This document shows, piece after piece, positions 4,967 to 58,621 of a stretch of 64,000 nucleotides of DNA. Made by a program: the position numbers and the translations under genes. The notes beneath the pieces are model-generated. The model was not told the origin of the DNA. It made no database searches and worked only from the letters and a program-made list of their open reading frames with translations. Position 1 is the stretch's first letter; the number at the start of each line of letters is the position of its first letter. Source of the stretch: Monocercomonoides exilis PA203 (lineage: Eukaryota > Protista > Preaxostyla); assembly GCA_001643675.2 (NCBI GenBank), contig LSRY02000004.1:496001-560000 (forward strand), read 5' to 3'.

Positions 4967-4997
<31 letters not shown>

Positions 4998-9166: not shown

Positions 9167-9386
9167 TAAAAAACTCAATAATACCATAACTTGACTTTTC
9201 TTATTCAGATTATTGAAAAAAATTTTTAATTTTAAGAAATGAATGTTTGTAATTTATAGTATTAGAACATTATATTAATTGATTGTGTCTTATTTTTTTC
9301 ATTTCATATTCATTAAAAATTTTTTATTTTTGAAATGTTTGTGAATTGATAGGTTTTCAATATTCGAGCTCTGTAAAAAAATTTTT

Positions 9387-34161: not shown

Positions 34162-37100
34162 ATGTGCCACAATGCCCAAATTATGAATCCGATTTTTGCA
34201 ATAATTTCAACCTGCTTTGTGATTATTGAATCAAAAGAACATTCAGAAAAAGAAACAAACCTTTTTGATGAACTGGCCGTGTTGCATGATCCACAATTTA
34301 ATAACAATTTAGGGGAACAGAAAAAATATCAATTCAGTGAAATTTGTTCTTCATTTCAATTGAGAAATTCTTCAATAATGATTGCAAAGATAATTCATAG
34401 TGAATACGAAAGAAAGCCAATGTTTTGTATTAAAAAAGGAGGAAGGCTTGAAGCTATTGATTATATTACTTCTGGTTCATCAAAGATTGTCCCGTTCAGA
34501 GTGGATGGAGGAAACATCAATTTGGTGAATCTGACGATTCAAACCTTAAGGCCGTTTGTCCAAATACCGCGACTTTTTAACTCGCCTTTCAAAAATTCTG
34601 AGAGAGATGGAACAGATTCGATCACCCTTCAAGAATCTTCATTTTCGTCATTTGAATTGGCATCTGCTCCGTTTCTTGCACCGAATGCGAGATGCCTTAT
34701 GAAAGCCTCTGGCTTGAAGATGACAAATATTTCTGTTGCTTCGGAAACACAAAGAGAAATGGATTTGAGAGCGAGAACAGAAACAACGATTGAAGGCTGC
34801 TCGTTTTTCAGTGTTTGGGATGTTATTTATGGAGGCATTTTAAGGTCGGTGAACAGCCCATGTGCCTTGCTGAGAGTCACAAATTCCTCATTTAAATGTT
34901 GCTTTCGAACGATGAATGTGAATGAATCAGGCGGAAGCAACATGACAAGGCAACCACTTGGGGCAGATGAAACGCACATTTTTACAGATTGCGAATGGTG
35001 TGATACGGGATTTGCAAATGTTGGAAGCGCAATTTATTTGAAAGGAAATTCAACTCTTGAGTGCATGAGATGTTCTTTTGCAAACATGAAACAAGGATAT
35101 GACGGAGCTGTTGACGTCCAATCTGCAGCAGGCGTGAAAATGACGAATTGTAATTTCACAAATTGTGTTTCAGGTGGCAATACTGGAGGAATGATTATTT
35201 ACAGTTTAAATGGAAATTATCACTTTGCTGAATGTATTTTTCTCAAATGTCAAGCGACTGCACATTATGTAGGAGGATTGCGAATTAATCAATTATCTGG
35301 AGTTGAAACCGAAACAATAAATAAATGCATATTCGATAATAACGAAGCAGGATCTTTTTGTGGTGGATTATTGGTTGAAACACACAAGAGCGCATTTTGT
35401 ATCTCTGATTGCAAATTTGAAGGAAATGTTGCAAATGGAACAGGTGTATCTGATTATGAAGGAGGAGGAGGAGGCATTTTTTTGTATTCTGCAAGTTGGA
35501 TGGAAACTGATTCACCTCCGACAGTTATATCGTTTTGCTTTTTTAGCTGCAATAAGGTTAAAAATGAAGAAGGCCATGATGTCAAAATCAAAAACTCTCT
35601 TTTGAAAGGTTCGCCATTTGAGACATCGTTCTCAACAACATCAGCAAAAAGAGTGTTTTACAACGGAAGCCAAACAGATTACGATATATGGCTTCCAACA
35701 ATCAAAACAACATATGCCAGAGCAGATGGGATTGAAGGGCCTATCTGTGGGACAACACAGGCCAGCCCGTGCAATTCGATTAAGCAGGCATACAACATGA
35801 TTGTGAAAGGATCAGAGGGAACAGTGAATATTCTTCGATCGACCTATCATTCAATGGCCCTGTTCATTGGAGGGGGAGATATTGCATTCAAAGGCGAAAG
35901 CGAGAGCGAGTGTGTCATCAGCACAGAATTGTTGAATTCTCATGAGTGTTTGTTCACATTGGATTCGGGATCGATGGGATTGTCTTTGGTGACAATTCGA
36001 CACAACAGCGCAGAATCATCATCTTCATTGCTTGTGATGCACACAGAAGCACAGAAACTGACACTAAAGAACGTGATCATTTCAGGGGCAGAAAATGGGC
36101 AGACACATTCATTTGATGTTTCTCCATTTAAAGTGATATTTGAGAAAATGAAGATGGAAAATTGCTTGATTGAGGATATTGGCCTGGGAGATTGTTCGTT
36201 GCTTGAGGAAGAGGAGGAAAGTGGAGTTTGGAGAGGGATGCTTGGAAATGTGACGATCCAAAGGATCAGCCGAATGAGAGGAGATGGAGCGATTTTCAGC
36301 TCTCAAAGTGAGAGAAGTGATTCTTGGGAGCTGGAGGGCACCACATTCAGAAACTGTGTGTGCAAGGAAGGGAATGGAGGGAGCGTTGCGTGGAGTGTTG
36401 GTCAAAGCGGGACATTCAAGATTGGCAGGGGAGAGGGGACGACAGTGATTGGAGAGTGTGGGGCAGAGAAGGGAAGTGGGGAGGAGAAGGGGAGAGGAGG
36501 AGGGGTGTATTTGGAGGTTTCATCACCAACAACAGTGTTTGAGGTTGTGAATGTGGGATTTGAAGACAATCGTGCAGAACATGGGGTGAATGTGTTTATT
36601 GCATCGCCTCAGCTGGAATTGATTCCAAAAGGGAGATATGAATTTGTTTCTCTTTTGAGCGAGGATGTACGTGAAGTGGAGGGAGTGGGAGACACAAACA
36701 AAGCAACACTGGTGATTCCGATTGTGTGCTATCTCCTGGATGTTCCGAGGAGTGAGGTCTATGTTACTGCAACAGGAGCAGATCATCCTCGGTGTGGACA
36801 CAGATTTTTCGAGTGCCGATCATTAAACTGCCCGATTGAAAGGGAAGAGAAAACACCAACAGATGGAACAACAATAGCGACAATCAAAATTGGAAATGAA
36901 ATTGAGGTTGGTTCGACAGTGGTGTTTTCGAAAATGGCAAGGGTGATAGAAGGAACAGGGAATAATGGATCACTTGTTGTTAAAGGCGAGGCTGCATGCA
37001 ATGGTGATGAGGAAGGATGCGACGGAGTGTTTGTGGTGTTGAAGGAAACAAGGATGAGTAAGATCGAGCTGGTGATGCCATCTGTTCTTGAGCATCATGA

Positions 37101-40100
37101 AGCAATATTCCAGTTGAAAGGCGAAACACTGAACTTGAGCGAATGTGTTATCACATTTGGAGTTGGTATAAGTTATGTTGGATATAACTTGATTGTTGTG
37201 GAATGTGGAGAGGCAAAAGTGACTTCACTGAGATTGGATTCTGTGAGGCTTGGAAATGAAGCGATTAAAGTGAACGGGGGCTTGTCATCTGTGGCGTTGA
37301 AAAATGTGGAGTTGAATGATATGACCTTTGAAGGAGAAATGGGATTTGCTGTTTGTGAGGGAGGGAGCACACTCACAGCAGAAAGTGTAATTGTCAGTGG
37401 GTGCGAAATGGGAGGAAGCAGCTTGATTTGGGCAGGGAGCAGTTGTATTGCGAGGATGAGGGAGTGTTCGTGGGATTCATGTAATTTTGTTGATTCTGGA
37501 GTGATAAGAGGAAGTGAAGCAAAGGAGATATCGATTTGTGGATGCAATGGGAGCAATATCCGAGTGAGTGAAGGAGATGGAGGGATGGTGAATGGAGTGT
37601 TCGGAGAAGGAGGGATGGTGGATGTGTGGAATTCGAGTGTCGAGGGGTACGTGGCAGAGAAAGGGAATGGAGGAGGGATGAGAGTGGAATTGAAAGAGGA
37701 TGCACAACTGAAGATCAGGAGTGAAGAAGAAGTGACACTGATGAAGAAATGTTCGGCTGGAATAGAAGCAACAATGAATGGAGGAGGATGTGGAGGAGGG
37801 TTGTGGGTGGGGATTGAAGGAGAGAGATATGGGTTTGATGTGAGAGGAGTGAGGTTTGAAGAGAACAGAGCAAGGAGTGGGAGGGATGTGTATGTTGTGT
37901 GTGATGATTTAAGGAGAGTTGTGAATGGAAGTCGTTTCTCGTTCAGTGGAGGGATAAGCGAGAGAGAGAATTCCCTGATTGGGAAGGACGGGCAGAAGTT
38001 TTTGAGTGAGGTTGATTTGTTCATATTCATTGAGGGATTCAGCTCGTCTGTAATTGAGGTGGAGAGTGAGAATGGAGACAATGGAATGTGGTGTGGGATG
38101 GAGAACTGTCCGTGCAGGAGTGTGGGTTATGGGATTGGGAGGCTTGGTGGAGAGGGAGAAAAGAAAATTGTGATAAGTGGGAGCACGAGTGTTGAGAAGG
38201 TGGGAGATGTGAGTGGAGTTCGGATTGAAGGGAAAGACAACATGAGAATGAAGGTGGTTGTGGAGAAAGGAATTGAAGGAGAAGGGGAAAGTGTTCTAGA
38301 TTCGAATGGGGTGAGTGTGTTTGTGAATGTTGGGTTTGAATTGCCTGGAGCCTTTGAACAGAGGAAGGATGTGGTAATAAGCTCAGGAACAGGAAGTGGT
38401 GTTTTGGAGATGGAATTGTGTTCGTTTGTGATGAAGGAAGGGGAAGAAGAGGCGATAGAATATCGAATCATCAGGAGCAGTGGACAAGCTGTGAGGATGA
38501 AGTGGATATTGATAAAAAACATCAGGACAAGAAAGTGTCTGATGGATCTTGCTCTTCTTGGAATGGAACAGAATGGAGCAGAGGGTGAAGTTGTGAGCAT
38601 CAGCAACTGCTCATTTGGGAGCCTGTCGGTTGTTGGTGGAGATGAATCAGCTGTGATATGTGGAGAGGTGAGGAAAGTGATGAAGATAGAACAGAGCAAC
38701 ATGAGTGGTATCACAGGAGGAGAGAGCATGAGTGGTGGGGCAATGAGGGTGAATATCCACGATTCAGGGATGATTCATGTGAAAGAGGGGAGGATGGAAA
38801 GATGCTCAGCAGAGAAGGTGAGTGGTGGGAAAGGAGGATGGCTGTATGTGAATTGCAGTGAAAGGAGGGGGGGAATGCCATTCAAGTTTGAGGGAGTGAA
38901 GTTTGCTGGAAATGAGGCATTTGTGGGGAAGAATATGTTCATTTTGGATTCAGATCTGAACGTGAGCGTGAGGAGTGAGACATTTGCGATTGATGTTGAA
39001 GGGATGGAAGACGATCAGAATCTGTACGTTGGAAGTGATGATAAGCGAATAAACACAGATCTGATGCGATTTGTGATTGAACACAAAAGTGAGAGGATTG
39101 TTATATGGGAAAAGGGAGATGATGTTGTTCGATGCGGGAGTGAAGAGGATCCATGTGAGACATTGGAAATGGGATTGAAGCACATTGAGAGAGGAGGAGA
39201 GAGAAAAGTGGTGAGAGTGAAGGAAAAAATAAGAGTGGAAGGGGAATATGATTTGAGTGGGATTGAAGTGGAATCAGTGGGAGCAAAATACGAAGAGATG
39301 GAATATGGAACGGTTGTATTTGGGAGTGAAGGAGAAAGTGGAACAAAAGTGTGCATTCTCAACAGTGGAATGATCAGTCTGAAAGCACTGGAAATGTGTG
39401 TGATGAATATTTTGGGAAGTGGGGATTCAGGGATGATTGTGAGTGAGGGAGAGAAAGTTGAATGGGAAGACTGCTCAATCTCATGGAAGAGAAAGAGAGA
39501 AGGGATGGGGAATGTTGCATTTTGTGTTGTGAAGAAAGGGGAGTTGGAGATGAAGAGGTTCAAAGTGCTTTCATATTTTGTGAAGAGAAGTGCATTTGTG
39601 GTGGGTGGAGAAGTTGTGAGTGTGATTGATGAATTTACAGTGATTGAAGCTGAACTGGAGAGTGGGAGTTTGTTTGAGGTTGAAGGAGAGGGAGCAAATG
39701 GAGGAGGTGAGATGAGGATGAAGAATTGCAGTATTGGATCAGTTGAAGGGAAAGGAACAGATCCTTGTGTTGTTTCGAGCAAGAGTGGAAGTGGAGTGAA
39801 GCTTGTGGTGGAAGATTCGCTGATTGAAGGGTGCAGTTGTGGGAGAAGCACAAAGGGAGGGGCGATGCTGTTTGAGTTGAATGAAGGAGGATGGTTCGAT
39901 GTTGTGAACACGAGTGTGAAGCAGTGTGGATGCTCTGTGAGCGAAGGGAAAGGAGGTGGGGTGTATCTGAAGACTGAATTGAGGGGAGAACTGGATTATG
40001 TGTTTGATGGGGTGATATTCCGAAGGAACACAGCAAGCGTTGGGAATGATGTGTTCATTGTGTGTGACTGCATTGAGAGGCAGATCAACGAAACACAGTT

Positions 40101-43100
40101 CAACATTGACTTCCGGGATGAAGAGTTCATCAGGCAGAATGCGATCTATGGGATGGATGCAGGAGATCACAAAGAGGAGGCGATGGACCTGATGAGCCTG
40201 ATTGTGAAATACCAGTCAGACACGATTGTTGTGTCGAGCAAAGAAGGGAAAGGAGGGAGGAATGAGCAGCAGTGTGGGAAGCCTTTGCTACCATGTGCGA
40301 CGATTGGGTTTGGGCTGAGACATCTGACACACGATTTCTTCACCCAGGTGTTTGTTGATGAGGAGTCAGTGATTGATGAGGAAATTGGATTGGAGACACT
40401 CACGCTGAGTGGGATGCATGAAGTGCAGAGTCGAGTGGTTGTTAAAGGGAGGATGAATTGCAGCAAAGAAATGATTGTGGAGACAAGTGGGCAGGTGTAT
40501 GTGCGATGGATGCAATTTGCCTTTGAAGAAGTTGAAACAAATCAAACACCAGTCGCACATTCATCATTCATGAAGATAAGTTCAGGAAAGACATCGATCA
40601 GCACGTGCTCATTTGAGGGAGTGAGCTCGGCTGAGAGGGAAATGGAGCAAATGCCATTCTGTTTGATATTTGTGGATAGAGGGAAATGCTCAATGGGGAA
40701 TGTGAGTGTTTCATGGCTTTCATTTGGAAGAAAAGCAGTGATATTGATAGAAGAGGACACTGAAGTGAATGGATTGACACTCAGAAACATTGAGGGAAGA
40801 AAAAATTGTTTGAAGATCAGGAGAGCTGGAAATTCGAGAATGGATAATGGATGCATGGGGAGTGCGAATGGAAAAAAAGAAGAAATGATGAACAGAGAAG
40901 AAAGTGAATTTTCATTTTCGATTTTGTCATCTTCATTTGAGAACATTACATGCGTGGATGAGAGTGCAGATGTGATTGATGTTGAGGAGATGGAAGGAAA
41001 TGTGGAGTTTTCGAACTGTTCGTTAGGTGGGTGTTCATCGAGAAGAAAGAAAGGGAAGATGATATCGCTTTTGAGGAGCAAAAACATTCAGATGAGGCAA
41101 TGCTTGTTTGATGGTGAAACAAATGAAAATCAATCGAATGAAGAAGTGGATGTGTGCAAATGGAATGGATCAGTTGTTGAGATGAAGGAGAGCTCGGGGG
41201 AGATTAAGGATACGAGTTTTGTGAACTGCTCTGATGGAGGTCTTTCTATTTGGGGAGGGAGTGCGGAGATTAACGCAGGGAATTTCACTAACAACAACCC
41301 AAACATTAAAAAATATCCATCAGCCAGGAGGAATATCATCTGTTCGGATTCAGGAATGTTGAATGTGATGGGTTTGAAAGGAGGAGATGGATTGAAGGAT
41401 AGCACATCTCTTTGGATGTTGAATGATGGGTGCAGTTTTGAAGGGATTGCTTCTGAAAGAGATTCACCATTCTTCATTCCTGTGTTGGAAAGTGTGGAAG
41501 CAAAGGAAGAGACAGATAGAATGAAGCTGATATTCAAAGGATTGCTTCTTGTTCCATGCAATCTGTCATTCTCAGTTGTGAAGAGGAAGGGAGAAGAGAA
41601 AGAGATTGAACATTATGATTTTGATTCAAATGGATTCTTGTCAGAAATAGAAGTTGAAGGAAGCGTGGCAAAAGATCTCATCAGAAGTTGTGGAAATGAA
41701 TTTGAGGTGTGTGTGTTTATTATGTTTGGAAACGCAGAATCTCCTTCATCAACAGATTCATACCTTCTGAAGAATGCAAGTATTACTCCACCAAAAGATG
41801 ATGAACGAATCTCAAAAGGAGGAAAAGAAGGAAAAATCTCATGGGTTTTGATTGTTTGTATTGTGATCGTGGTGATACTGTTAATTGTATCAATAATATT
41901 CATTGTTCGATGGAAGAAGGTGAAGAATGAAGCAGAAGATCTGAGAGAGATTGTGGAAGACACAGTGAAGAAGGATCCAAAAGCATTTGAGATGGTGACG
42001 ATGGAGATGTCGCCTGAGGAGCAGTGGAGGAGGGCAGAGAGGGAGGCAGAGAAGAAAAATGATGAGAGAATGAAGAAGAGAATATATGATACGAATATGC
42101 AACATTCTGAGTCTTCAGAGCATCTTTTGAGCGAGAGTGGCTCCACTGAATACATTTTGGGGAGAGACTCAGACAAGATTCCTGAATGGATGCTGGAGAA
42201 GGTTGACGAAAAAGAAGAGGAGGAAACAAGAAAGCGAACACCATCGCCATCCATTTCATCCACTTCAACCACAGACACTTCAGACACAGAATCCACTTTT
42301 GTTCGGAGAGAGGATTTGTGCCCCACTACTTCATCGATGTCGAATCTGGTGGATGCAATGGCATGCTCATCCCCTCACGAGAAATTGATTGTAGACTTGA
42401 GGGATTCGCTGTTCATGTTGCTTCACGGGAGGAACAAGACAAAGGAGATGGCGATTGGCACTCTGCAGGAGAGGGAGCAGACGGCTGCTCAGATCCTGTT
42501 CTGGGTGGCGAATCTTGCGCTCCACTCCTTCGACGAAATGAACAACCCGCTCCAATCGTTGGCCAACCTGAGTCCGCACATTGTTCTCTTCTCGGAACAT
42601 ATGGTGATATGCATTGTGATGCATTCAGACTTCTCTTCTGATGATTCCGATTCATCATCCATCTCTTCATCAACAATTGTGACATCTGCCAGTGATGATG
42701 ATGATGACTCTCTTCCATCATCGGCCTTTGAGGATGAAGATTGTTTCAAAAAAGAGTGCCTGAGGTGGATGGCGCCTGAGCTGCTGATGAACAAGAAGAT
42801 GGGAGCAACAAAAGAATCTGTTGCCTTTTCAATTGGGATGATGCTGTGGGAATGTTTGACACTGAAGATCCCGTTTGAGGAGTATGAGGCCGAGGTGGCA
42901 GGGCAGAAGATTGTGAATGGAGAGAGGCCAAACTTGGAAGCTGTTGAGTGTGCGAGCTGGAGCGAGCTTGTGAAGTGCTGCTGGGCAGGGCAGCCATCAG
43001 AGCGGAAGACGCTTGGAGAAGTGAAGCGAGAGTTGATTGGACATTTTCCAGCTGGAGCTGTGATGGTTACGATGTCAGATGCGATTGATCTGAGGAGGGA

Positions 43101-43164
43101 AAATGAAAGTGGAAGCGGAAGCGGAAGCGGAAGTGGAAGAAGCAATGACGGATACAGAAGCTGA
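34162..43164 (+). CDS. Giant receptor-like surface protein A (3,000 aa): beta-helix/Pmp-like repeat ectodomain, one TM helix, degenerate TKL-like kinase tail
   Basis: Repeated GGG(V/L)Y...F..N.A..G.(D/N)(V/I)F and CG....PC.(T/S) motifs. TM WVLIVCIVIVVILLIVSIIFIV followed by RWKK. Kinase C-lobe motifs RWMAPEL, FSIGMMLWECLTLKIPF and CW..PSER. Single uninterrupted ORF. Confidence 0.8.
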   Translation: MCHNAQIMNPIFAIISTCFVIIESKEHSEKETNLFDELAVLHDPQFNNNLGEQKKYQFSEICSSFQLRNSSIMIAKIIHSEYERKPMFCIKKGGRLEAIDYITSGSSKIVPFRVDGGNINLVNLTIQTLRPFVQIPRLFNSPFKNSERDGTDSITLQESSFSSFELASAPFLAPNARCLMKASGLKMTNISVASETQREMDLRARTETTIEGCSFFSVWDVIYGGILRSVNSPCALLRVTNSSFKCCFRTMNVNESGGSNMTRQPLGADETHIFTDCEWCDTGFANVGSAIYLKGNSTLECMRCSFANMKQGYDGAVDVQSAAGVKMTNCNFTNCVSGGNTGGMIIYSLNGNYHFAECIFLKCQATAHYVGGLRINQLSGVETETINKCIFDNNEAGSFCGGLLVETHKSAFCISDCKFEGNVANGTGVSDYEGGGGGIFLYSASWMETDSPPTVISFCFFSCNKVKNEEGHDVKIKNSLLKGSPFETSFSTTSAKRVFYNGSQTDYDIWLPTIKTTYARADGIEGPICGTTQASPCNSIKQAYNMIVKGSEGTVNILRSTYHSMALFIGGGDIAFKGESESECVISTELLNSHECLFTLDSGSMGLSLVTIRHNSAESSSSLLVMHTEAQKLTLKNVIISGAENGQTHSFDVSPFKVIFEKMKMENCLIEDIGLGDCSLLEEEEESGVWRGMLGNVTIQRISRMRGDGAIFSSQSERSDSWELEGTTFRNCVCKEGNGGSVAWSVGQSGTFKIGRGEGTTVIGECGAEKGSGEEKGRGGGVYLEVSSPTTVFEVVNVGFEDNRAEHGVNVFIASPQLELIPKGRYEFVSLLSEDVREVEGVGDTNKATLVIPIVCYLLDVPRSEVYVTATGADHPRCGHRFFECRSLNCPIEREEKTPTDGTTIATIKIGNEIEVGSTVVFSKMARVIEGTGNNGSLVVKGEAACNGDEEGCDGVFVVLKETRMSKIELVMPSVLEHHEAIFQLKGETLNLSECVITFGVGISYVGYNLIVVECGEAKVTSLRLDSVRLGNEAIKVNGGLSSVALKNVELNDMTFEGEMGFAVCEGGSTLTAESVIVSGCEMGGSSLIWAGSSCIARMRECSWDSCNFVDSGVIRGSEAKEISICGCNGSNIRVSEGDGGMVNGVFGEGGMVDVWNSSVEGYVAEKGNGGGMRVELKEDAQLKIRSEEEVTLMKKCSAGIEATMNGGGCGGGLWVGIEGERYGFDVRGVRFEENRARSGRDVYVVCDDLRRVVNGSRFSFSGGISERENSLIGKDGQKFLSEVDLFIFIEGFSSSVIEVESENGDNGMWCGMENCPCRSVGYGIGRLGGEGEKKIVISGSTSVEKVGDVSGVRIEGKDNMRMKVVVEKGIEGEGESVLDSNGVSVFVNVGFELPGAFEQRKDVVISSGTGSGVLEMELCSFVMKEGEEEAIEYRIIRSSGQAVRMKWILIKNIRTRKCLMDLALLGMEQNGAEGEVVSISNCSFGSLSVVGGDESAVICGEVRKVMKIEQSNMSGITGGESMSGGAMRVNIHDSGMIHVKEGRMERCSAEKVSGGKGGWLYVNCSERRGGMPFKFEGVKFAGNEAFVGKNMFILDSDLNVSVRSETFAIDVEGMEDDQNLYVGSDDKRINTDLMRFVIEHKSERIVIWEKGDDVVRCGSEEDPCETLEMGLKHIERGGERKVVRVKEKIRVEGEYDLSGIEVESVGAKYEEMEYGTVVFGSEGESGTKVCILNSGMISLKALEMCVMNILGSGDSGMIVSEGEKVEWEDCSISWKRKREGMGNVAFCVVKKGELEMKRFKVLSYFVKRSAFVVGGEVVSVIDEFTVIEAELESGSLFEVEGEGANGGGEMRMKNCSIGSVEGKGTDPCVVSSKSGSGVKLVVEDSLIEGCSCGRSTKGGAMLFELNEGGWFDVVNTSVKQCGCSVSEGKGGGVYLKTELRGELDYVFDGVIFRRNTASVGNDVFIVCDCIERQINETQFNIDFRDEEFIRQNAIYGMDAGDHKEEAMDLMSLIVKYQSDTIVVSSKEGKGGRNEQQCGKPLLPCATIGFGLRHLTHDFFTQVFVDEESVIDEEIGLETLTLSGMHEVQSRVVVKGRMNCSKEMIVETSGQVYVRWMQFAFEEVETNQTPVAHSSFMKISSGKTSISTCSFEGVSSAEREMEQMPFCLIFVDRGKCSMGNVSVSWLSFGRKAVILIEEDTEVNGLTLRNIEGRKNCLKIRRAGNSRMDNGCMGSANGKKEEMMNREESEFSFSILSSSFENITCVDESADVIDVEEMEGNVEFSNCSLGGCSSRRKKGKMISLLRSKNIQMRQCLFDGETNENQSNEEVDVCKWNGSVVEMKESSGEIKDTSFVNCSDGGLSIWGGSAEINAGNFTNNNPNIKKYPSARRNIICSDSGMLNVMGLKGGDGLKDSTSLWMLNDGCSFEGIASERDSPFFIPVLESVEAKEETDRMKLIFKGLLLVPCNLSFSVVKRKGEEKEIEHYDFDSNGFLSEIEVEGSVAKDLIRSCGNEFEVCVFIMFGNAESPSSTDSYLLKNASITPPKDDERISKGGKEGKISWVLIVCIVIVVILLIVSIIFIVRWKKVKNEAEDLREIVEDTVKKDPKAFEMVTMEMSPEEQWRRAEREAEKKNDERMKKRIYDTNMQHSESSEHLLSESGSTEYILGRDSDKIPEWMLEKVDEKEEEETRKRTPSPSISSTSTTDTSDTESTFVRREDLCPTTSSMSNLVDAMACSSPHEKLIVDLRDSLFMLLHGRNKTKEMAIGTLQEREQTAAQILFWVANLALHSFDEMNNPLQSLANLSPHIVLFSEHMVICIVMHSDFSSDDSDSSSISSSTIVTSASDDDDDSLPSSAFEDEDCFKKECLRWMAPELLMNKKMGATKESVAFSIGMMLWECLTLKIPFEEYEAEVAGQKIVNGERPNLEAVECASWSELVKCCWAGQPSERKTLGEVKRELIGHFPAGAVMVTMSDAIDLRRENESGSGSGSGSGRSNDGYRS

Positions 43165-43831
43165 AAGTTGAAGGTGAAGCTGGAACAAGAGAAGTGAAAG
43201 GACGGACGCTGGACATGGGCTGCTGAACCGATGAGTTTCCGATGAACATTTGCTGAGCTTGTTCAGAACAGATGCTATTTTGTGAGCACCCACATGGTGA
43301 GCAAAGCCGAAAGATGCTGCAAAATAGGTGGCAAGCTTCTTCTTCTTCTTCTTCTTTTCTTTTCTTTTCTTCTTTGAGAAGATATTCTTCCAAACAATTC
43401 CTTCACTGATCGATTGCAATGAAAAGAATGGTGAAGTTTGAAGAAGAAGAAAAGGGTGCAAACGGACAAGGATGAGGGTGGGATAATGCTATTGCTGCTT
43501 GTGGGGAAAAAAATATTAATTACTGTTGCTCAACAGTGGCTGCTGAGGAGAGATTTTCTTCTCACTCCTTGGCATGCATTCCTTCTGTTTTCCGTTGAGT
43601 GTGCTGCTTTTGAAATCCTGAAGATAAAGCGACACAACGAGAGGGGAGTCTGCAAATGCTATGAGAGCAATCACAATCTTTTTGCAATAGGTGAGTATTT
43701 TTATTGGCACCAGTTTTTTTATTGGCACCAAAAATTATTTTCATTATCTTCATTTCATTAAAGCTCATAAATCTGTTTCATAACATAAGTACAATAAACA
43801 AATAAAAAATAAGCTGTCGGTTAGTGTTTTT
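41765..43831 (+). repeat. Left arm of a 2,067-bp inverted repeat
   Basis: Position p mirrors 89642-p. All mirrored ORF translations are identical (e.g. 43438-43761+ vs 45881-46204-). Both ends were checked base by base, with first mismatches at 41764 and 43832. Confidence 0.95.
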
Positions 43832-47877: not shown

Positions 47878-50800
47878 TGAATGAATTGGAAAAACTTGGT
47901 GCTGCGGGATCTCCATATTGAAGTGACACAGAAACTTCTGTTTCATCTTCGGTATTTCCCAGCTTTTCTGTTGGAACACATGAGTGAACTTCATTCTCTG
48001 AGATAAACCCATCTGTGTCAAAACCGTATTTCTCAACCTGCTCTTCACTGCCCCTCCTGAAAACTAATCTCAACATCAGATCGCAAGGCAAAAGAAGCTG
48101 CCCTTTAATCTTCAGCTTTGTCGCAGTTCCTTCATTTTCTTTCTCCACTGACTCGAGCAACGGAATGAAAAATGAAGAAGGACATTCCCCCGCTATTCCT
48201 TCCATTTCACAATTCTCGCTCACGATCCATAAGGATGAATTTTTCACAGTTCCATCTCCTCCCTTCAGGCTCCTGATGTTCAATATTGCATGGTCTGTGC
48301 AAATAATGTTCCGTCGAGCTGATGGATATCCTTTCACTGATGGATCATTCCCCGAAAACATGCTCATCACCACCCCAACATTCCCACTTGACACGGACAG
48401 TCCACCAACTTCCGAATTCTTGATCGTTGTATCATTGAGTTCCACATGAGAATTCACACAATCAACAAGAGATCCGTTCCATTTGCATAGTTCATCTCCA
48501 GCACTCGAGCAAAGTCTGTTTGTGTTCCTCTTATCTCTCTCAATTTCTCCATCAAAAACACTCGATTCAATAATCACATTTGAACATGAACTTATTGACA
48601 CAACTTCTCCCTTTTCCTTTTTCGTGTTTGTGCAGCTTCCAAATGTGCTGTTTCGAATTAGCAGAGGAATGTGTTTCGATTTGAGTCTTATTACACTTCC
48701 ATCCAATGAAGAACATGTTATATTCTTCATTTCTGCCACACTCAATTCAATCATTTTTTCTCCTTCTTGCTCCAAAACTTGTTCACCATTTTCATCAACA
48801 TGAATGCACCATCTTTCACAAGTGATATCGCTCATTCCGATCTTCTCCATCAAGACACTCTCACAACCACTCTGGCACTCGATCAGACAGCTTGAAGTCA
48901 CATGCAACGACTCAAACTTGATATCAAACAACTGAGCACTCCCTCCACCAAAGCTTAGACAAATAAAGGGAAAGTCACTCAATTGTTCATCTGATTCCAG
49001 CCCACTAAAGCCACATTGGCTCATCAAGAAAAAGCCAGACTCAACTGCAAAAAGCGTTGAATGTTGAGGTGGTTGTGAGGTTTGCACCACAAAAACAAGA
49101 TACAAAACCGACACAACACCTTCACTTCTCACAACTGCTTCAATCCCTGGAGCAAAAGCATTCTCCACCACAGCAACAACACCTTTCTTTCCAGGTGCAT
49201 TAAGAGCCGTCAGCGTCAAATCATGGAGATCCACCTCACTCATCAACTTCGACTCTTCATCCACAAGCATCCTCGCTTCCACATCTCTCGTCACATGACC
49301 CAACCCATACTCAATGGACAAGCATGGATTCGCCCGACTTCCACAATTTCGCTCATTCTTTCCATTCTTCCCCAAGGCATTCGACAACACAATGATGTCA
49401 GACTGAAAGATTGCAATGATGCTCATCAAATCAATCGGCTCGCTCGTGTGCTCCGTTCTGTCTATCCCACAGATTGCATTCAGTCGCACATACACAGACT
49501 CCCGCAGATCCATCAGAAACTGTGTCTCGTTTATCTGCCTGGAGATTCGATGGCACTCAACAAATATATCCCGCCCTGCTTTTGCACTGTTTGCACTGAA
49601 GTTCATGTTAACAAAACAAAAGTCAAGATCCTCTGTCAGTCTCGTTGCAACATACACACCTCCTCCTCTCCCCTCCATCGAGCACCCGCACCTCACCATC
49701 AAGCAATCAACCATTCTCATAACTCCTCCTTCACTCAGTTCAAACAAGCACACTCCACCTTTCATCGACTTATTCCCCAGACAACCCTCAAATCTACTGC
49801 CATTCACCACCAGCTCTGCTCCTCCGCTCCCTTCACTGATCATTCCACTCGGCTCAACACCATTGCAAGTGATGGATGAAAAAGTGGAATTGCACAGAGA
49901 CACAACACAACCCTCATGTGATCCCTTCACAGATTCCTCCATCGCAAATGTCTCCACAACAGATCCGCTCCTGAAGCTCACTGATGTGAAGACAATCTTA
50001 TTAAGATCACACTCAACACCATCCCCGTTCACAAGCAGAACACTCTCACAAAAACTCGTCGATTCACAGCTCAGTCGACAAACAACCATTCGACCCTTTT
50101 CCATCCTCACCATGTTGATGTTTCCTTCTTGTTCAGGTATCTCTTTCAAACTGAAAGAACAATCTGTAATATTCAACATTCCATCCTCGTTGATGATCAC
50201 AGCCTTCTTTTCATTCTGCAAACTTGACTTCACCAGCAAGTTGATCATCTCGAGCAACAAAGTTTTTCTGTTTTTCACATACCCTCCACTCCCTGATGAA
50301 TCGCTCCCTTCAAATTCTAACGTTGCCAGTTGACCCTCAAAACCATCCGCATTTGTTATTCCATGAGGTGAAGCAGCTTTTCTTCTGGCAAGAGATGCAG
50401 AGGCGATGACCATTTCTGAGAGGTCAAATCCATCTGTGATCTTTGTCTTTTCCCAAATGAATATTGCCTTCTTTTCAGCTCCCACCTCCAGTTGTTGCAT
50501 CCCTTTCCAAAATGAACAGCATGGGTCCCTTTCGCTCCCACATCTCTTCACATCGAATCCCTTCTCTCCAACATATATATGCCCAGAGCTGAACGAAACA
50601 AGAAAACGGAACAGGTCTGTTGTCTCATTGAACACATCCCTCCCCACAAATGCATTTTCATCATCCTTCAACGATTCGAAATCAAAGCAAAAGGCTCTTT
50701 CACTCACTGTTCTGTTCAGATCCCTTTCCACAACAAAAATGTTTTTCCCTCTCCATGCCTCATTTCCATCAAACACCATCTCTTCAAACACAAATGGCGT

Positions 50801-53800
50801 TTCCTGATTCGCTTTGCTTGAGTCCACAAACAAAAACCCTCCTTTGCTTTCCTCCTTCACACACTGACATCTCACTGCTGTTATGTTTTTCATTTGAAGC
50901 CTCGTGACAACTGAGTCGAGAATGACTCTCATTGCTCCTCCTTCCTCACACTAACTTGAAATCCCTTCCACAGTGCATGAGCTGATGTTTGTGTCGCACT
51001 GCAGCACAAACGGGGTGCTCACAAACTGAACTGTTCCTACAACACATTCTCCAATCTCAACTTTTCCTCTGATCCCTTTGATCAGATACACATCCACCTT
51101 CCTGCTTGAACTGCAATCAAACAGGCACTTGCGAACGATCAGAGCTTCACTTTCACTCATCGATGAGTATGTGATCAGGATCTCATGACCACTCGAAAAC
51201 GAATACGGAAGAGCAAACACTAATCCAGCAAAACGTAATGCGCCTTGCCCAGTTATCACCGTTTTCTCTCTCTCTCCTTTGATTTCGGTTTTGAATTCAA
51301 GTCGACTTTTCTCTCCAGAATCATTCGCGGAAGAACCTTCTGAACAGATTTCACATCCCGTCAATTCATATTCGTTTTCAACAAATGTCCCATCTGTGAT
51401 GACAACCCTTTTCGAATCCAAACTGCCCTTCACATTCTCAAATCCTCTCCAAAAAGACTGACATGGATATGTCTCACTCCCACAGCCAAGAACATCACAC
51501 CCTTTCTTGCTCACTCGTATTTCTTCCGAGACATACTGAACCAACAACAGCTTCAGATCCACAATTGCTCCTCCAAAGTTTGTCTCATCGCTTCCTGCAA
51601 AATCCACACACACTCTCCCTTCCTCATCAAATAGCACTTCTTCAAAACAAGTGCTCTTCATTGATTCATTCAAATCCACACTTCGAACAAACATATCTCT
51701 CCCAGCCCATGCAACGTTCTCAGAAAAACTCACATTCCCAAAAAACAAAACTCCATTTCCAGTTATTTCAGCAAAAACACTTCCACCCTTTCCATCGTCC
51801 GTATTCGCCGAGCATCCTTTGAGTGTGCTCGATCTTATTGTGAAAACTGAGTATTCATTCATTTCGCTGTTTATCATTCCACCATCTCCTTCCTTTGCCA
51901 AACATCCAACAAAATTGCAGTCGTTCTCCACTTGCAGCTTGCTCCCTTTTGCTATCCGAATCACACCTCCTTTCTGCGAACTGCTCTGAGTGATGTTGGA
52001 TGAGTTAATCATCATCTCTCCACCTTGTTCAATAACAATTATCCCTCCACCTTCTCCGCTCACTTCACCGACTGATGTGTTTTCAACACTGGCAAAGCAC
52101 TCTCCTCCCACGCAAACCATCCCATATCCTCCTTTGAACAGCATCCCAGGCACACTCACAGACACAAAACCAATCTCTCCTCCTCTTCCATTCACAATCC
52201 ATTCCCAGCACTGTCTTTTCTCTTCTCCAATCTTCCCGAATGCACAGCTGGTGATTGATAATTTCCCACTCTCCACGCACACGAACTCATCAAACTCACT
52301 TTTTTCCTCAGGAAGCCAGATCCTCAGGCTGCTCAACATCAGATTGTTCGGCTCCAACGATGATGAAAGCAACAAATGCCCTTCTGCTTTCACATTCATC
52401 ACACTTTCACTGTTCTTGCCTCTTATCGCCAATGGATGTTCTCTTCGCTCAACTTCCTTCTCCAGGTCTGCTTTCGTCTTGATTTGCACAATCCACTGGC
52501 TCTCATTCATCCGCCCCATCCCATATCCCACATCTCGACAAAACCCTTCCACACTGAACATCCCACAGTTTGCTTCATTCTTCCCACTTTCATCCACAAA
52601 CACTATCTCTTCATCCCCAGGGAACAGATACGTCTTCAGAGACACACCTTCATCGCTCCCTGCTTCTCCATCCCCAACCCAAAAGTTATTCTCTCCAGCA
52701 CCCTCATCAAACCCTTCCCAAACAACTAGTGTAATCATTGTTCGTGGTGAAGGACACACAACATACACATCCCATCCGATTAATCCCACATTCGATGCAA
52801 ATATATTCCTCCTCACCCAATAATTCACTTCTGTGCTTTCAATGTTAATGAATAACCCACCTCCTTGTCCACTCTGCTCTGAAACAATATTCTCCTTCAC
52901 AGTGTTGTCATCAAACTCCATCCTGCCACTGCCGCTCAACGATATCATCATCCCCCCGCCTTTCCCGTTTCCAATCAATGCCCCGCAGTTTGTCATGTTG
53001 CACTGCCTCATCTTGAATGAGCACCCCTTCTCCACTTTTCCCTCAATTCCCCCACCATTTCCAATCTGCCTCTTCCAGTCACTCAACGATGAATTGTCCA
53101 CAATTGTCTCAGCACACTCATCGATAGAAAGCAATGCACAATTCTGCAGCAACTCTGAACCTGAAACTGAAGAATCATTGATCCACATTGAGCAGAGCCT
53201 TCCCACCATCAGCCCCTTCTGCCCATTGCAGCTCACAGAATCAATGGCCATCCCACTGAATCGTCCACTCGCTTCATTCCCTTCAACCACAAACATCCCA
53301 CAATTCCCCAATTTCACATCTCTTGCTTCAAAACCCACAACTTCCAACGTCCCTCCCTCAACTCTCGCAAAATTATACTCAACACTTTTTGTTTCATCAC
53401 TTCTCCACACACACGAACAGCCAAGCATTTTCATTGTTTTCTGACCAACAAAGAACAAATTCATTCTTGCAATTGGAACAAATTCAATTGGCACCTCAAA
53501 ACTCACATCGCTAATCTCAACATCCACAAATGATTCAACAACATTTGATCCTTCTCCTGTGATGTTCTGCACAAACTTCGTTTGAAGGCTCTTGTCAAGA
53601 CCTCGCAAAAAAATATTCTTGTTGCTGAAGGAAAGGCATTCTTTGAATGCAAACGAAGGATAAATATGGATCTCAGTCACATTTTGACTCAATTTGATCC
53701 GGCGGGAAAGAAGAAATCTGACACTCTCACAAGGCACATCTCCAAATCCACATCCCGAATGATCAAACCCTTCATCCTCCTTTCCTCCAACATAACCCCC

Positions 53801-56800
53801 ATCCCCAATCTCCCTGAAATAGACCTCAAGAGGAATCCAATATTCTGTTTTGGTTGTTGATTCCTCAAATCCCATCAGATCTTCTCGTTCCATTCCTTCC
53901 ATCTCAAACTTCATTGTGTTGTTGTTCACAACAATGTCCAACTGCATCGCATCCACAAACATGTTCCTCCCTTTCCAGGCACTGCAAGTCTCAAATGTCA
54001 GCTCTGAGAGTGTCAATACGCCACTTCCATCCAACAGCTCGAGAAACATTCCCCCTCCGAGCCCTCTTCCAACACTCTCCGAGTCTTCAGCAGGAACAGA
54101 ACAGTTCTTGAATCCAACTTTCTCCATTGCCAGCTCAATGCCCGCATCCAACACCACAAGCAATCCGCCTCCTTTCAGGCTCATTCCTGCTTCACATGCT
54201 CCACCAATAGTCACATTCTTCATCCTCACAAACGGATTCTCCCCACTTTTTCCTCTCAAATTCATGCATCCTCCATTCCCATTCATTTTGCTCACATTAC
54301 ACAATACACAATCTTCCATGGTAATTTTTCCTCCATTCTCCACAGCAAATCCAGAACAGCCATGGAATCCAATCCCATCTTCCAAGCACACACATTTCAT
54401 CGTCAGATCCCCGCTGCAAACATGAATCACACTGAACTCAACAAACACCCCTTCTTTGTCTCCCAAAAACGCAAATACGCACTCTATCAACTTCAGATCC
54501 TTCTTCGAAATAAGAAAACTGCAATGACTTTCTTTCATGGAGAGTGGAAGTGCAAACGAAATGTTTTCAAAGCTGATGTTGCTCGCACACTCCACAAGGC
54601 CTTCTTGCTCCACATCTCCATTGTCATGAACATCAACCATTATTCCAGGGCTGACCTGAGAGGTCACACTCATGGCAAACAGGGGAAAGGCAAATTCATC
54701 ATTTATCGATGATCCAGACTCAAGCATCACAGACTCCACGTTGTTTCCTGCTCGTCTTCCAGCACAATAATCAACTGTCAAGCACGGAAACGAAGCAAAT
54801 CCACAAAAATCGTGATCAGTTCCACAACTCCCATCAACAACCAGCTGCGTTCCGACTGAGCACAGAAACACATGAAGCGGAATAACACATGATTCGTTCC
54901 CATTTTCCATCCCGCTCAGCTGCAGTGCATCTGTTGGAATCGTTTTGAAATCGAAAAACTCGAATGATGAGCGATTGGTCACTTCTCTCAGATGAACTCC
55001 TCTCTCACACAAAACAAGCACATCCTTGCCATATCTCGCATCATTCTTTTCCAATGACCCAAAAGTCACATCCCCTCCAATCTCGAATTTCAACGGAACC
55101 TCTTCCACCCTGATCATCATCCCCCCTCCTCTGCCATTTGCCCCTTCACCACCTGGTGCTGCACAACCATCAAACGCTGTTGTTCCGTTGATGAACAGTT
55201 CGTTCTCTCCCTTCACTTCAGCCATCATTCCCCCACCACATGAGCTGCTTCCAGCCACACCACACCCACTGAAGTTGCACGAATCAATCGCCATCCTGAT
55301 TTTCTTCTTCTCAGCAGATATGCAACCCCCATTTCCGCTCTCTTTTTTCACCCCCACCATTTTGCATTCACACAGCACAACTTCACATTCCCCATCAACC
55401 CAGATCATCGAGGAAGATGAAAACTCAATCCCAGTCTCACTGTTGAACGATTCCATGTGTATCCTTCCCCCTGTCACCCTCACAATGCTGAAGCTCACTT
55501 TCTGCTCAGAAGACATATCAGTCAAGGATGCTGAGCAACATTTCATATGAAAGGTTCCTGATGAACATGAAATGAACGATGCTGCAGCTCCCAGATTCGC
55601 TGGAAGATAAAATCCTATGTTGGCTAATTCAGTCTGATTTTTCACCATTATCATCCCCTCAGATGTTGCTGAATCGACCTTTGCCACTTCAACCCTTTCT
55701 CCCACAAGCTCGCAGCTCACGTTCCACTTGCAGTCTTCCATCGCAACAACTTCCTTCAAAACAAAGTTCGGATTGAGGATTATGGTGCAATCACTGTTCG
55801 GAAACTGAACAGAACTCATGAAGTTCATCGTTGCACAAGGATAACCGTCAAACCCACAGTTGTTGAAATCCTTGCAATTCCTTCCCCCAACAAACCCTGG
55901 AATTGGAAATGGATGAATCATATAAATAGACAAGGGAATTATGAAATCCTCATCACTGCTTTCGCTCCCCATTGCATCATTGTCATGCTCTCTATCTGCT
56001 TCAATGCAGCTCTTGAAATGCACCTTTGAAACAATCCTCTTCAAATCATCCCCAGAAACAAACATGTTGTTCCCCTTCCATGCCTGGTTGTTGGCTCCAA
56101 ATCCCAAACCATCAAAAATATAACCTGTTGCTCCATCATCCACTCTGAGGTACACTCCTCCTCCTTTTCCTTTCAACCCTCCATCATTTCCCGCAGTGCA
56201 CATATCAATTGAGCAACTCAATGTTGCTCCTATCTTCAGTGTTCCTCCACTTCTGACAACAACATTCACACCTCCTCCGTTTCCCTTTTCACTTCTGCAT
56301 CCCGTCAAACTCGCATTCTCAATGATAACCACTTTTCCAGAGTCAATGACCCCGCTCACTGCTCCTCCATCTCCATTCATGTTAGTGATCCCTGAGATGT
56401 CAACTGACGTCAGATTCAGTTCACACGCTTGCCCAACTGAGATCAGCGATGCTCCTGACATATCGAAATCACAAAAAACCACATTTTCCATCTTTGTTCT
56501 GCCTTCTTTCAAATCACAAGCTGCTTTTTCAAAATACGATTCTTCATATCTATCTCCCTTCACAATGGCTTCTCTCACACTCAATGTTCCTGCCGAGGTT
56601 ATTGTGAAAAGCGATGACAGTCCACACGATGAGAGTCTCGAATGGACCAAAGTCATTGATGATAACTCCAGACTTCCACTCGATATTTCAAACAGCCCTC
56701 CTCCATCTCTTGTCACTTTCGAATACAATACCGTTCTTTCTTTGTCTTCTCCACTTATCTCCACACTCTCGCTCCCAATCACAATGCTTTCTTCTGCCTT

Positions 56801-58621
56801 CTCTCCTCGGTGGACAACCATCGGCAATTTCCCTGATCCTCTCCATCTGCTGTCGAAGGTGTATTTCAGCGTCAGACACAAAAACGTTTCGTTTCCGCAA
56901 TTAGCATCGTCGCTTCCACGCTGAGCAGATGAATGAAGCTTGGCCATCGGCTTGGGTGAAGGTGGAAAAGGAATCCAATTTTCATGACCTGTTGCTCCAT
57001 TATCAATGAACAAATGTGGTTCAATTGATGTTGAGAAAGTCTCCACAAATGACTGTTTTGTCAAATTACTCCAGTTTTTAATTCCATAAACATCACTTGC
57101 ATGAGTTCCCGTTGTTGATGCCTCATTTCCCGAGAAAAAACATGTCACAAATGAAACATTGAAAAATGATGCAGATAGATATTGCTCTGTGAGAAAAATA
57201 CATCCTGTTCTTGATGCATGATTGTCCTCAAAAAGACAATCGCGAAAAGAAAAATTCAAGCCACTGAATGTAATTTTCCCCACTCCAGTTTCATAATTTT
57301 TGTTATTATGCGCAAAGACACATCCAGAATACAACGCACCCTTGTAGTTATCACAAAACTGCACAACTCCTTGAGCAGAAGGGCTGCTCAAAAACTGGCA
57401 ATTCAGAACGGAAAAAAAGACTCTTGAGCGAAGGCAAGCTGCTCCTCCAATATTTGCTTTGCAATCTGAAAAATTTGTTTCTTCCATTAAAATCTGTTCA
57501 TCTCCCGAAATATACATAGCTCCACCATGTTGATCAATAGCTTTTGTGCAATTGCATTTAAAAAATATGCACACTCTTATTGTCAAAGCAGCACTGCTGA
57601 ATATTGCGCCTCCTCTTTCTTCGCTTTGAGAGCAAAAACTGCATCTTATAAAGCTGTGATTGCCAGTTGACAGCTCTTGCCTCGTGTTGAAAGTCGAATT
57701 AACTGATGTCGCTAAAAGAAGTCTCTTTTTCCCAAAAAGAGCATTGTTGTGATCAAGCGCATTCAATTTGAAGATGCATGATTCAGTTCTAATAATTGAG
57801 CCTTCGTCAGTATTTCCATTTCCTAAAATTTTCAAATCTTTCCAAATTGATGATTGCTTCTGAAGGGATCGATTCGAAGAATAAGTTGAAGAAGAAAAAA
57901 GAGAAGAAGAAGAATAACAAGGAGATGGAATTTTGCTTTTCTGCAGTTGAGTGATATTGATGAATGAACAGCCCTGAAGATGCACCAAGTTGCTTCCTTT
58001 TCCAATGAGAACAAACGAATCCTTTGCAACGCTCAGCGAACAAATCGAACTCTGCTCAATCAAAAAATGTGTGTTTTTCCCTTCACACAACGGACTTGTA
58101 ACGTGTGCAGGGCTTTGCGAGTCACTTATTGATATGTTGAAAATTCTCACTGACGCTGAGCATGTCCTCGCCAAAGAAGAATAATCGCAGCTGCTTCTCA
58201 CTTTGCAGCTCTCCAAAACAAGTTCTCCATTTCTTTCTATTTCAAACACATTTGCGATATTCCAACTTCCAAGAAGTGATATTTTCTCAAAAGTCGCAGA
58301 TCCATTGGAGAGAAAACAAAAACATCTGAGCTCAGTCAAATCTGTCTCATCCTCGTCATGATTGTTAACCCTCTTTGACAATTCTGAAACTTCGTCTTCC
58401 ACTTTGTTTTCTTTTGTATCTTTTCTGTTTTCCTCAATATGTCCCTCTGACTGGAAAATTTCATGACTTTCAGTCTGTCTGTTTTGAACACTGCTAAAAT
58501 CTGTTGTTCGCAGGCTTTCACAAAGATTCGCAGCCACAGCGCAAAACTCCAGTAGCATCCAATTAATGTGGCAACGCTTTTCTCTGGTTTGGCAAACAAA
58601 TTGATAAGTATCTTTTTTCAT
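46478..58621 (-). CDS. Giant receptor-like surface protein B (~4,047 codons), same family as A, interrupted by one in-frame TAG at 50951-50953 (possible young pseudogene)
   Basis: ORFs 50951-58621 and 46478-50932 are in the same frame: ...ATT TCA AGT TAG TGT GAG GAA GGA GGA GCA ATG = ISS*CEEGGAM. Same repeat motifs as A. The last 465 aa are identical to A. Confidence 0.8.

What the first reader, a model, noticed from the sequence alone, without database searches (positions are those of the whole stretch)
34162..58621. Transposon-centred palindrome gives two different giant receptors one identical 'constant region'
Seen: two convergent surface-receptor genes have highly divergent ectodomains but share an apparently base-identical 2,067-bp inverted arm (465 aa of stalk, TM and cytoplasmic tail, plus ~530 bp of 3' flank and the TIR). 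The arms surround a 1,979-bp spacer occupied by a dead pogo transposase. Inference: the TIR pair nucleated a template switch, arm-to-arm gene conversion or alternative transposition that copied one gene's signalling tail onto the other. If this recurs in the genome it would be a TE-driven variable-ectodomain/constant-tail shuffling mechanism for a surface-receptor family. I know of no description of this in such protists.
Basis: partly seen in the sequence, partly recalled or inferred. Interest (0 to 1): 0.85.

Follow-up and report, generated by a model that had tools for sequence, protein, structure and literature searches.

The report
Palindrome sharing one receptor-gene tail
Two facing giant surface-receptor genes of the gut protist Monocercomonoides exilis end in the same 2 kb of DNA because their ends were copied onto each other by recombination; a dead transposon marks where the last copy stopped, but the same tail-sharing happens across this gene family without it.

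Summary
Confirmed: 41765-43831 and 45811-47877 are identical inverted arms (0/2067 mismatches) around a 1,979-bp spacer in Monocercomonoides exilis. They give two convergent receptor genes (ectodomains 22-32% identical) one 465-aa stalk/TM/degenerate-kinase tail.

Corrections: the 'TIR' is a MITE end plus 13 bp of the true pogo TIR, and gene B has an in-frame stop upstream of the tail. The arm is chimeric: its outer ~1 kb has gene A ancestry and its inner part gene B ancestry, which implies copying in both directions. The last tract ran from a conserved 20-bp box to the pogo TIR.

The transposon is not the driver. None of 29 other pogo loci has inverted flanks, and three other tail-to-tail palindromes on this contig lack it. 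Two of them share a spacer, are ~90% alike between and 99.6-99.7% within pairs (concerted evolution). Across the family, tails group by contig and ectodomains by type (60/87 vs 3.5 expected).

Best reading: local gene conversion homogenises tails, and the TIR served as one junction. No read spanned the locus. The scan noted this architecture before on other pieces of this genome.

The parts
34162..43164 (+). Gene A: intact 3000-aa ORF; giant ectodomain, one TM helix, degenerate-kinase tail
   Evidence: ectodomain has >=17 relatives at 82-88% DNA identity on other contigs
41765..43831 (+). Left arm, 2,067 bp, identical to the right arm
41755..41774 (+). Outer switch box: conserved in-frame stretch where gene B changes from B-type to A-type sequence (mirror 47868-47887)
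   Evidence: informative-site painting: last B-type site 41754, first A-type site 41775
41842..41907 (+). Transmembrane helix (A residues ~2561-2582), inside the arm
   Evidence: hydropathy scan
42748..43035 (+). Kinase-like C-lobe remnant (residues 2863-2958); no HRD, DFG or VAIK in any of 123 tails
42770..43687 (+). Inner part of the arm with B-type ancestry (tail end plus 523-bp 3' flank)
   Evidence: 96-100% to B-type paralogues over most 100-nt bins, 26-65% to the A-side relative
43688..43816 (+). TA target plus terminal ~127 bp of a foldback MITE; the site is empty in three paralogues
43819..45823 (+). Dead pogo-like (DDE_1) transposon, ~2.0 kb, short TIRs; sits at the MITE's internal TA position, which here reads TC on both arms
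45826..45954 (-). Mirror copy of the MITE end and TA
45811..47877 (-). Right arm, 2,067 bp
46478..58621 (-). Gene B: 4047-codon frame, 94-96% to three B-type paralogues; received A-type stalk/TM at 47877
50951..50953 (-). In-frame TAG at codon 2557 of gene B (Glu in paralogues); the truncated 2556-aa product is on record in both NCBI and EukProt
   Evidence: contigs from reads are inconclusive

Best explanation
This is a tail-to-tail pair from the largest gene family of M. exilis (giant ectodomain, TM, degenerate TKL-type kinase), whose 3' ends were homogenised by repeated recombinational copying between inverted neighbours. SHOWN: the arm is chimeric; B is the recipient at the outer junction; a MITE entered a TA in the B-type flank; the pogo sits at a TA position inside that MITE; the MITE/pogo junction is unique in the genome and present on both arms. 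INFERRED order: (1) gene A gained B's tail end and flank by earlier arm-to-arm conversion; (2) the MITE and then the pogo inserted into one arm; (3) a recent break or fork-collapse repair copied ~2.05 kb from the A arm onto the B side, using the pogo's two TIRs as the inner homology (fold-back priming, or two-ended gap repair) and the conserved stalk box as the outer homology, erasing the rest of the MITE and the old spacer. The TE is an opportunistic junction, not the engine. Family-wide, the conserved tail is the substrate for local conversion, so tails track the chromosome while ectodomain types are spread across chromosomes.
For: 0/2067 mismatches while the nearest paralogous tail is 92%. 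Chimeric painting. The B-type 3' end occurs at >=97% in five places; two are non-B genes, each facing a B-type gene. Three other inverted pairs on C36: P2 core ~3.1 kb with 3 differences, P3 5,077 bp 99.6%, P4 >=5,807 bp 99.7%, none with this pogo or MITE. P3 and P4 share their spacer and are ~90% alike between, but 99.6-99.7% within pairs. 0/29 other pogo loci have inverted flanks. Tail and ectodomain distances are uncorrelated (Mantel rho 0.002, 123 proteins). 26/27 pairs with tail >=85% and ectodomain <55% share a contig, against 3.2% of all pairs; 60/87 vs 3.5 expected. The older-annotation (EukProt) model of the P2 gene stops exactly at the P2 arm boundary, as a short-read assembly would at a true repeat.
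Against: No read or contig spans this locus or was shown bridging its junctions. A-side ancestry rests mainly on one proxy paralogue (L006), itself a patchwork. A convergent pair on C14 is only 83% alike, so conversion is not universal. P2-P4 spacers were tested only against this pogo and this MITE; other small inverted elements could sit at their centres (P3/P4 show a ~40-bp degenerate inverted fringe). Proteins in the family test were the best hits to A's tail, which truncates the range of tail distances.
Confidence: 0.72

Rival explanations
1. TE inverted repeats are the general initiators. TIR pairs of pogo, MITE or other elements seed fold-back duplications, which rejoin in a paralogous tail; pairs without a recognisable TE have lost it or pivot on another element.
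For: The last tract here ends within 13 bp of the pogo terminus. P3/P4 have a degenerate inverted fringe around a ~375-bp spacer. Unchecked scan notes describe MITE-centred palindromes elsewhere in this genome.
Against: 0/29 other pogo loci have arms. Four MITE copies fetched showed self-inverted matches only within the element. P2 ends in plain AT-rich DNA. Tail sharing also occurs between direct-orientation neighbours (L024/L028, 96.9% over 1.8 kb) and chromosome-wide.
Confidence: 0.15
2. Alternative transposition (sister-chromatid or reversed-ends type) by a transposase acting in trans on the nested MITE/pogo ends made the inverted duplication.
For: Two directly oriented termini on each side resemble a double-Ds-like structure (from memory). 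The MITE and pogo share a TIR motif.
Against: The outer junction has no TE end or target duplication and is an in-frame homologous switch. The pogo's flanking TA reads TC on both arms and its TIRs are decayed.
Confidence: 0.04
3. Assembly or polishing artefact: one arm was collapsed onto, or polished to, the other.
For: No spanning read was seen. The assembly paper says multi-copy regions polish unevenly (PMC8767320). No older-assembly model crossing the B junction was found.
Against: Canu assembly from ONT reads with N50 8.9 kb, longer than the 6.1-kb palindrome. The arm is chimeric and in frame on both sides. The same architecture recurs with different partners and boundaries. The older model breaks at the P2 boundary. 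Polishing could hide a few SNPs but could not turn ~85% into 100%.
Confidence: 0.06
4. A programmed, selected variable-head/constant-tail switching system with dedicated machinery.
For: The junction is in frame just outside the TM; incongruence is family-wide; the family is very large.
Against: Boundaries differ between pairs (P1 at the stalk box, P2 ~90 codons further out, P3 further still). Patch exchange also scrambles the tail itself. Gene B is broken. No recombinase or expression site was seen.
Confidence: 0.03

Closest known systems
Giardia lamblia inverted vsp gene pairs (PMC2996952)
   Same: Metamonad surface-protein genes in tail-to-tail pairs 2-4 kb apart, with flanks near-identical for a few hundred bp past the stop and then abrupt divergence.
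   Different: There the paired ORFs are identical throughout; here identity covers only stalk, TM and tail, and the ectodomains are of different types. No TE pivot was described there.
Regional gene conversion in protocadherin clusters (PMC1852091)
   Same: Paralogues with divergent 5' ectodomain and >99% identical membrane-proximal 3' region, homogenised by repeated conversion within local subclusters.
   Different: Tandem clusters, with the constant cytoplasmic part supplied by splicing; here single-ORF genes in inverted pairs and dispersed along chromosomes, with the whole tail copied at DNA level.
Arm-to-arm gene conversion in mammalian Y/X palindromes (from memory)
   Same: Arms near-identical within a palindrome but diverged between paralogous palindromes that share a spacer (P3/P4).
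   Different: Arms here are 2-6 kb and begin inside a gene, so conversion fuses different heads to one tail.
Fold-back and template-switch inverted duplications at short inverted repeats (e.g. ODIRA, PMC4689423; title and abstract only seen)
   Same: A short inverted repeat (the pogo TIR pair) marks the turn-around of an inverted copy.
   Different: The loop is 2 kb, the copy rejoins in a paralogue, and it replaces rather than amplifies sequence.
M. exilis tyrosine-kinase-like family (PMC6759080; PMC8767320)
   Same: Largest gene family of this genome, overlapping its unclassified repeats; these genes belong to it by PF07714 and by 524 homologues, the best 120 all from M. exilis.
   Different: The passages read describe neither a degenerate catalytic core nor palindromes nor tail homogenisation; a library search for Monocercomonoides plus palindrome found nothing relevant.

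Membership tests
Palindrome with arm-to-arm gene conversion | Long near-identical inverted arms around a unique spacer | tested here: met
   2,067 bp, 100%
Palindrome with arm-to-arm gene conversion | Exchange in both directions or repeated homogenisation, not one duplication | tested here: met
   Chimeric arm; P3/P4 within-pair 99.6-99.7% vs ~90% between. For this locus it rests on paralogue proxies.
Palindrome with arm-to-arm gene conversion | Structure exists on single molecules | tested here: inconclusive
   Only fragmented Logan contigs available; none spans
Fold-back / template switch at a short inverted repeat | Inner end of the copied tract lies in a pre-existing short inverted repeat | tested here: met
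   Tract ends between 43818 and 43831, within the first 13 bp of the pogo TIR
Fold-back / template switch at a short inverted repeat | Intrastrand priming rather than two-ended gap repair | not testable with these tools
   Both routes give the same product
Alternative transposition (Ac/Ds-like) | Both ends of the duplication defined by TE termini or target-site duplication | tested here: not met
   Outer junction is a homologous in-frame switch without a TE end
TE-driven shuffling system | Other copies of the element flanked by inverted receptor tails | tested here: not met
   0 of 29 other loci, 1.5-kb flanks; junction unique
pogo-like (IS630-Tc1-mariner) transposon | DDE_1 transposase domain | tested here: met
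   PF03184, E 4.4e-5, above gathering score, on a 112-aa fragment
pogo-like (IS630-Tc1-mariner) transposon | Short TIRs with TA target duplication | tested here: met
   12 of 12 full-length family copies are TA-flanked; this copy reads TC
pogo-like (IS630-Tc1-mariner) transposon | pogo-type catalytic triad spacing and CENP-B-type HTH; placement in a transposase tree | not tested
   The N-terminal fragment gave no Pfam hit; frames were not repaired
Active protein kinase (TKL group) | Gly loop, VAIK lysine, HRD, DFG | tested here: not met
   HRD/HGD, DFG and VAIK-like motifs in 0 of 123 tails; APE in 123 of 123
Receptor pseudokinase | Complete bilobed kinase fold without catalytic residues | tested here: inconclusive
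   Only subdomains VIII-XI match; model pLDDT 47, all-helical, unreliable
Antigenic-variation cassette system (VSG/vlsE type) | Single expression site, one-way conversion from silent donors | not testable with these tools
   No expression levels obtainable; the DNA pattern is two-way

The most novel reading that the evidence does not exclude
M. exilis uses local recombination, with TE inverted repeats among its preferred pivots, as an ongoing and selected way to recombine hundreds of giant ectodomains with chromosome-specific signalling tails: a DNA-level variable/constant receptor repertoire in a unicellular gut eukaryote.
Probability: 0.12. Interest if true: 0.8.

Novelty: new variant of a known kind. 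Interest (0 to 1): 0.45.

Why it matters
The locus keeps the order of events unusually legible: MITE insertion, nested pogo, then a recent copy bounded by a TIR and a conserved stalk box. The wider result matters more. In the largest gene family of the amitochondriate model protist, tails are homogenised by chromosomal address while ectodomain types are dispersed. Gene trees, orthology and the 'tyrosine kinase' annotation based on the tail are therefore misleading, the family looks catalytically dead, and the genome shows substantial ectopic recombination. The processes themselves (gene conversion, fold-back at inverted repeats) are known, no function is shown, and one partner here is probably a pseudogene.

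Tried and rejected
1. TE as general driver: rejected.
2. One composite 'long-TIR pogo' element with 142-bp TIRs: no second copy; the two longer MITE-ended elements hold a Merlin-like ORF and unrelated DNA.
3. One-way copy of one gene's tail: rejected by site painting.
4. All convergent pairs being palindromes: rejected, the C14 pair is 83%.
5. Reads: only Logan contigs, three of four runs from one sample that is probably the assembly's own; no spanning piece, and depth is unusable as copy number. All four runs show C at 50953, but other B-specific letters are also missing from the contigs, so this cannot decide the stop.
6. Search for an older-assembly model crossing the B junction: none found.
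7. Structure models of an ectodomain piece (pLDDT 36) and the tail (pLDDT 47) were too weak for a fold search. A beta-helix ectodomain is only suggested by PF13229 on some homologues.
Full report
SOURCE. The window is G000:C36:496001-560000 of an 82.3-Mb, 101-contig assembly. That matches the ONT assembly of Monocercomonoides exilis (PMC8767320), and the homologous proteins are named M. exilis.

OBSERVATION. Self-comparison gives one long inverted repeat. Positions 41765-43831 and 45811-47877 are identical over 2,067 bp, with mismatches at 41764 and 43832, leaving a 1,979-bp spacer. Gene A (34162-43164, +, 3000 aa) and gene B (58621-46478, -) share their last 465 codons exactly, while their ectodomains align at 22-32%. 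Gene B carries an in-frame TAG at codon 2557, where three paralogues have Glu. The truncated 2556-aa protein is on record in NCBI and EukProt; if EukProt holds the older 454-based models (my inference from the naming), the stop is in both assemblies. Contigs from reads cannot decide it. As assembled, only A makes a full receptor.

THE PROTEINS. Both have a single TM helix and a tail whose C-terminal part matches PF07714 and TKL-group kinases over subdomains VIII-XI only. HRD, DFG and VAIK-like motifs are absent from all 123 tails examined, while APE is universal. The tail is therefore a degenerate kinase remnant; whether it signals is unknown. The family is large: 1,101 first-look candidates in the genome and 524 protein hits within the length window. 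It corresponds to the published tyrosine-kinase-like expansion (PMC6759080). Structure models were too weak to use.

THE CENTRE. The pogo-like element spans 43819-45823. Twelve other full-length copies have short TIRs and TA on both sides; this copy is broken and the most diverged, 87-91%. The ~127 bp outside it on each side is the end of a ~982-bp foldback MITE with about 14-16 copies. The MITE entered a TA in the receptor 3' flank, which is empty in three paralogues. Other MITE copies have a TA exactly where the pogo begins, so the pogo most likely inserted into the MITE. Here that TA reads TC on both arms, and the junction is unique in the genome. A junction that arose once but stands on both sides of one element must have been copied, and identity stops at TIR position 13. 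The last tract therefore ended in the pogo TIR, removing the rest of the MITE and the original downstream DNA (inference).

THE ARM IS A CHIMERA. B is 92-100% identical to its own clade in most bins up to a conserved 20-bp box (41755-41774 in A coordinates) and then switches to A-type sequence: the last B-type informative site is 41754 and the first A-type site 41775. B was thus the recipient of A's stalk, TM and juxtamembrane region. From about 42770 inward both arms are B-type. That 3' end occurs at 97% or more in five places, all on C36: three B-type genes and two non-B genes, each facing a B-type gene. Copying therefore went both ways at different times. The outer junction is homologous and in frame with no TE end, which argues against alternative transposition. 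The A-side ancestry rests mainly on one proxy paralogue.

RECURRENCE WITHOUT THIS TRANSPOSON. None of 29 other pogo loci has inverted flanks. Three further tail-to-tail pairs on C36 have near-identical arms. P2 (843.6-846.7 / 851.3-854.4 kb) has a ~3.1-kb core with 3 differences and a 4.6-kb spacer. P3 has 5,077-bp arms at 99.6% and a 378-bp spacer. P4 has arms of at least 5,807 bp at 99.7% and a 374-bp spacer. None contains this pogo or MITE, and in P2 and P3 the ectodomains diverge outside the arms. P3 and P4 share their spacer and are ~90% alike between pairs but 99.6-99.7% within pairs, the signature of continuing arm-to-arm conversion. Not every convergent pair is homogenised (C14 pair 83%), and direct-orientation neighbours also share tails (96.9% over 1.8 kb). 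Other kinds of small inverted element at the P2-P4 centres were not excluded.

FAMILY-WIDE PATTERN. Among 123 proteins, tail identity and membrane-proximal ectodomain identity are uncorrelated (Mantel rho 0.002). Using contig length as the contig label, 26 of 27 pairs with tail >=85% and ectodomain <55% lie on one contig, against 3.2% of all pairs, while 193 of 213 pairs with ectodomain >=75% and tail <80% lie on different contigs. For 60 of 87 genes the closest tail among different-ectodomain genes is on the same contig, against 3.5 expected. In trees of 25 hand-picked proteins, tails group largely by contig and ectodomains by type; A and B are identical in the tail tree, but A groups with two genes of another contig in the ectodomain tree (the ectodomain tree is a quick search with long branches). 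The sample was selected for similarity to A's tail.

ARTEFACT RISK. Reads were available only as fragmented contigs and none spans the locus. Against an artefact: read N50 of 8.9 kb exceeds the 6.1-kb palindrome; the arm is chimeric; the design recurs with different boundaries; and the older model of the P2 gene ends exactly at the P2 arm boundary, as expected for a real repeat. Polishing may have hidden a few SNPs. Residual risk is about 6%.

MECHANISM. The conserved tail gives neighbouring paralogues a long homology, and repair of breaks by conversion or template switching copies tracts between them, most completely between close inverted partners. Here the latest tract used the pogo TIRs as its inner junction. 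The structures and ancestry switches are shown; the order of events, the initiating lesion, and fold-back versus gap repair are inferred.

COMPARISON AND NOVELTY. It works like Giardia tail-to-tail vsp pairs (PMC2996952) combined with regional 3' homogenisation of protocadherins (PMC1852091) and fold-back at short inverted repeats. It fails the tests for alternative transposition and for a TE-driven system. No paper on M. exilis palindromes was found in the library searched. The scan's own unchecked notes describe the same architecture on other pieces of this genome; these were used as leads only. Verdict: real, a new variant of a known kind, interest 0.45.

Noticed in passing
proteins P0001-P0123: Tails of this receptor family cluster by contig while ectodomain types span many contigs (one type: 17 genes on 8 contigs). 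This chromosome-scale concerted evolution may be the most general result.
   Followed up: partly
L066 (G000:C67:148200-151100) and L069 (G000:C1:2543200-2549400): Copies of the foldback MITE hold other inserts: a Merlin/IS1595-like transposase ORF (recognised by eye) and a 4.8-kb unrelated segment. With the pogo here, the MITE looks like a landing pad.
   Followed up: partly
G000:C36:1240317(+) / 1248907(-): Convergent tails 8.5 kb apart with identical scores; probably a fifth palindrome on this contig. Not fetched.
   Followed up: no
L003 (C36:~649.6 kb), equivalent of window 41818-41909: A lone B-type gene about 110 kb away carries a ~100-bp patch identical to the A-type TM, i.e. short-patch conversion outside palindromes.
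   Followed up: partly
window 41400-41765: Gene A itself switches ancestry near 41490: most close ectodomain relatives stop matching there and a C36 neighbour (L006) takes over at 89-99%, so A is a three-part mosaic.
   Followed up: partly
L064 / L065 spacer edges (P3, P4): A small variant in the degenerate inverted fringe lies on opposite sides of the spacer in P3 and P4, a hint of past exchange between arms.
   Followed up: no
window 59553-60137 (-): 194-aa ORF, 64% identical to the N-terminal region of another family member; a fragment or part of a further receptor gene upstream of B.
   Followed up: no
window ~59170-59600: Start of a repeat family with >=11 copies at 84-93% elsewhere in the genome, next to a GAA tract.
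   Followed up: no
window 855-30975 (-): Housekeeping-type genes left of gene A, recognised by eye only: an adaptor-complex mu-subunit-like ORF (8495-9187), a casein-kinase/TTBK-like C-terminal piece (2219-6406), a WD40-like ORF (9703-11334) and two large unassigned ORFs.
   Followed up: no
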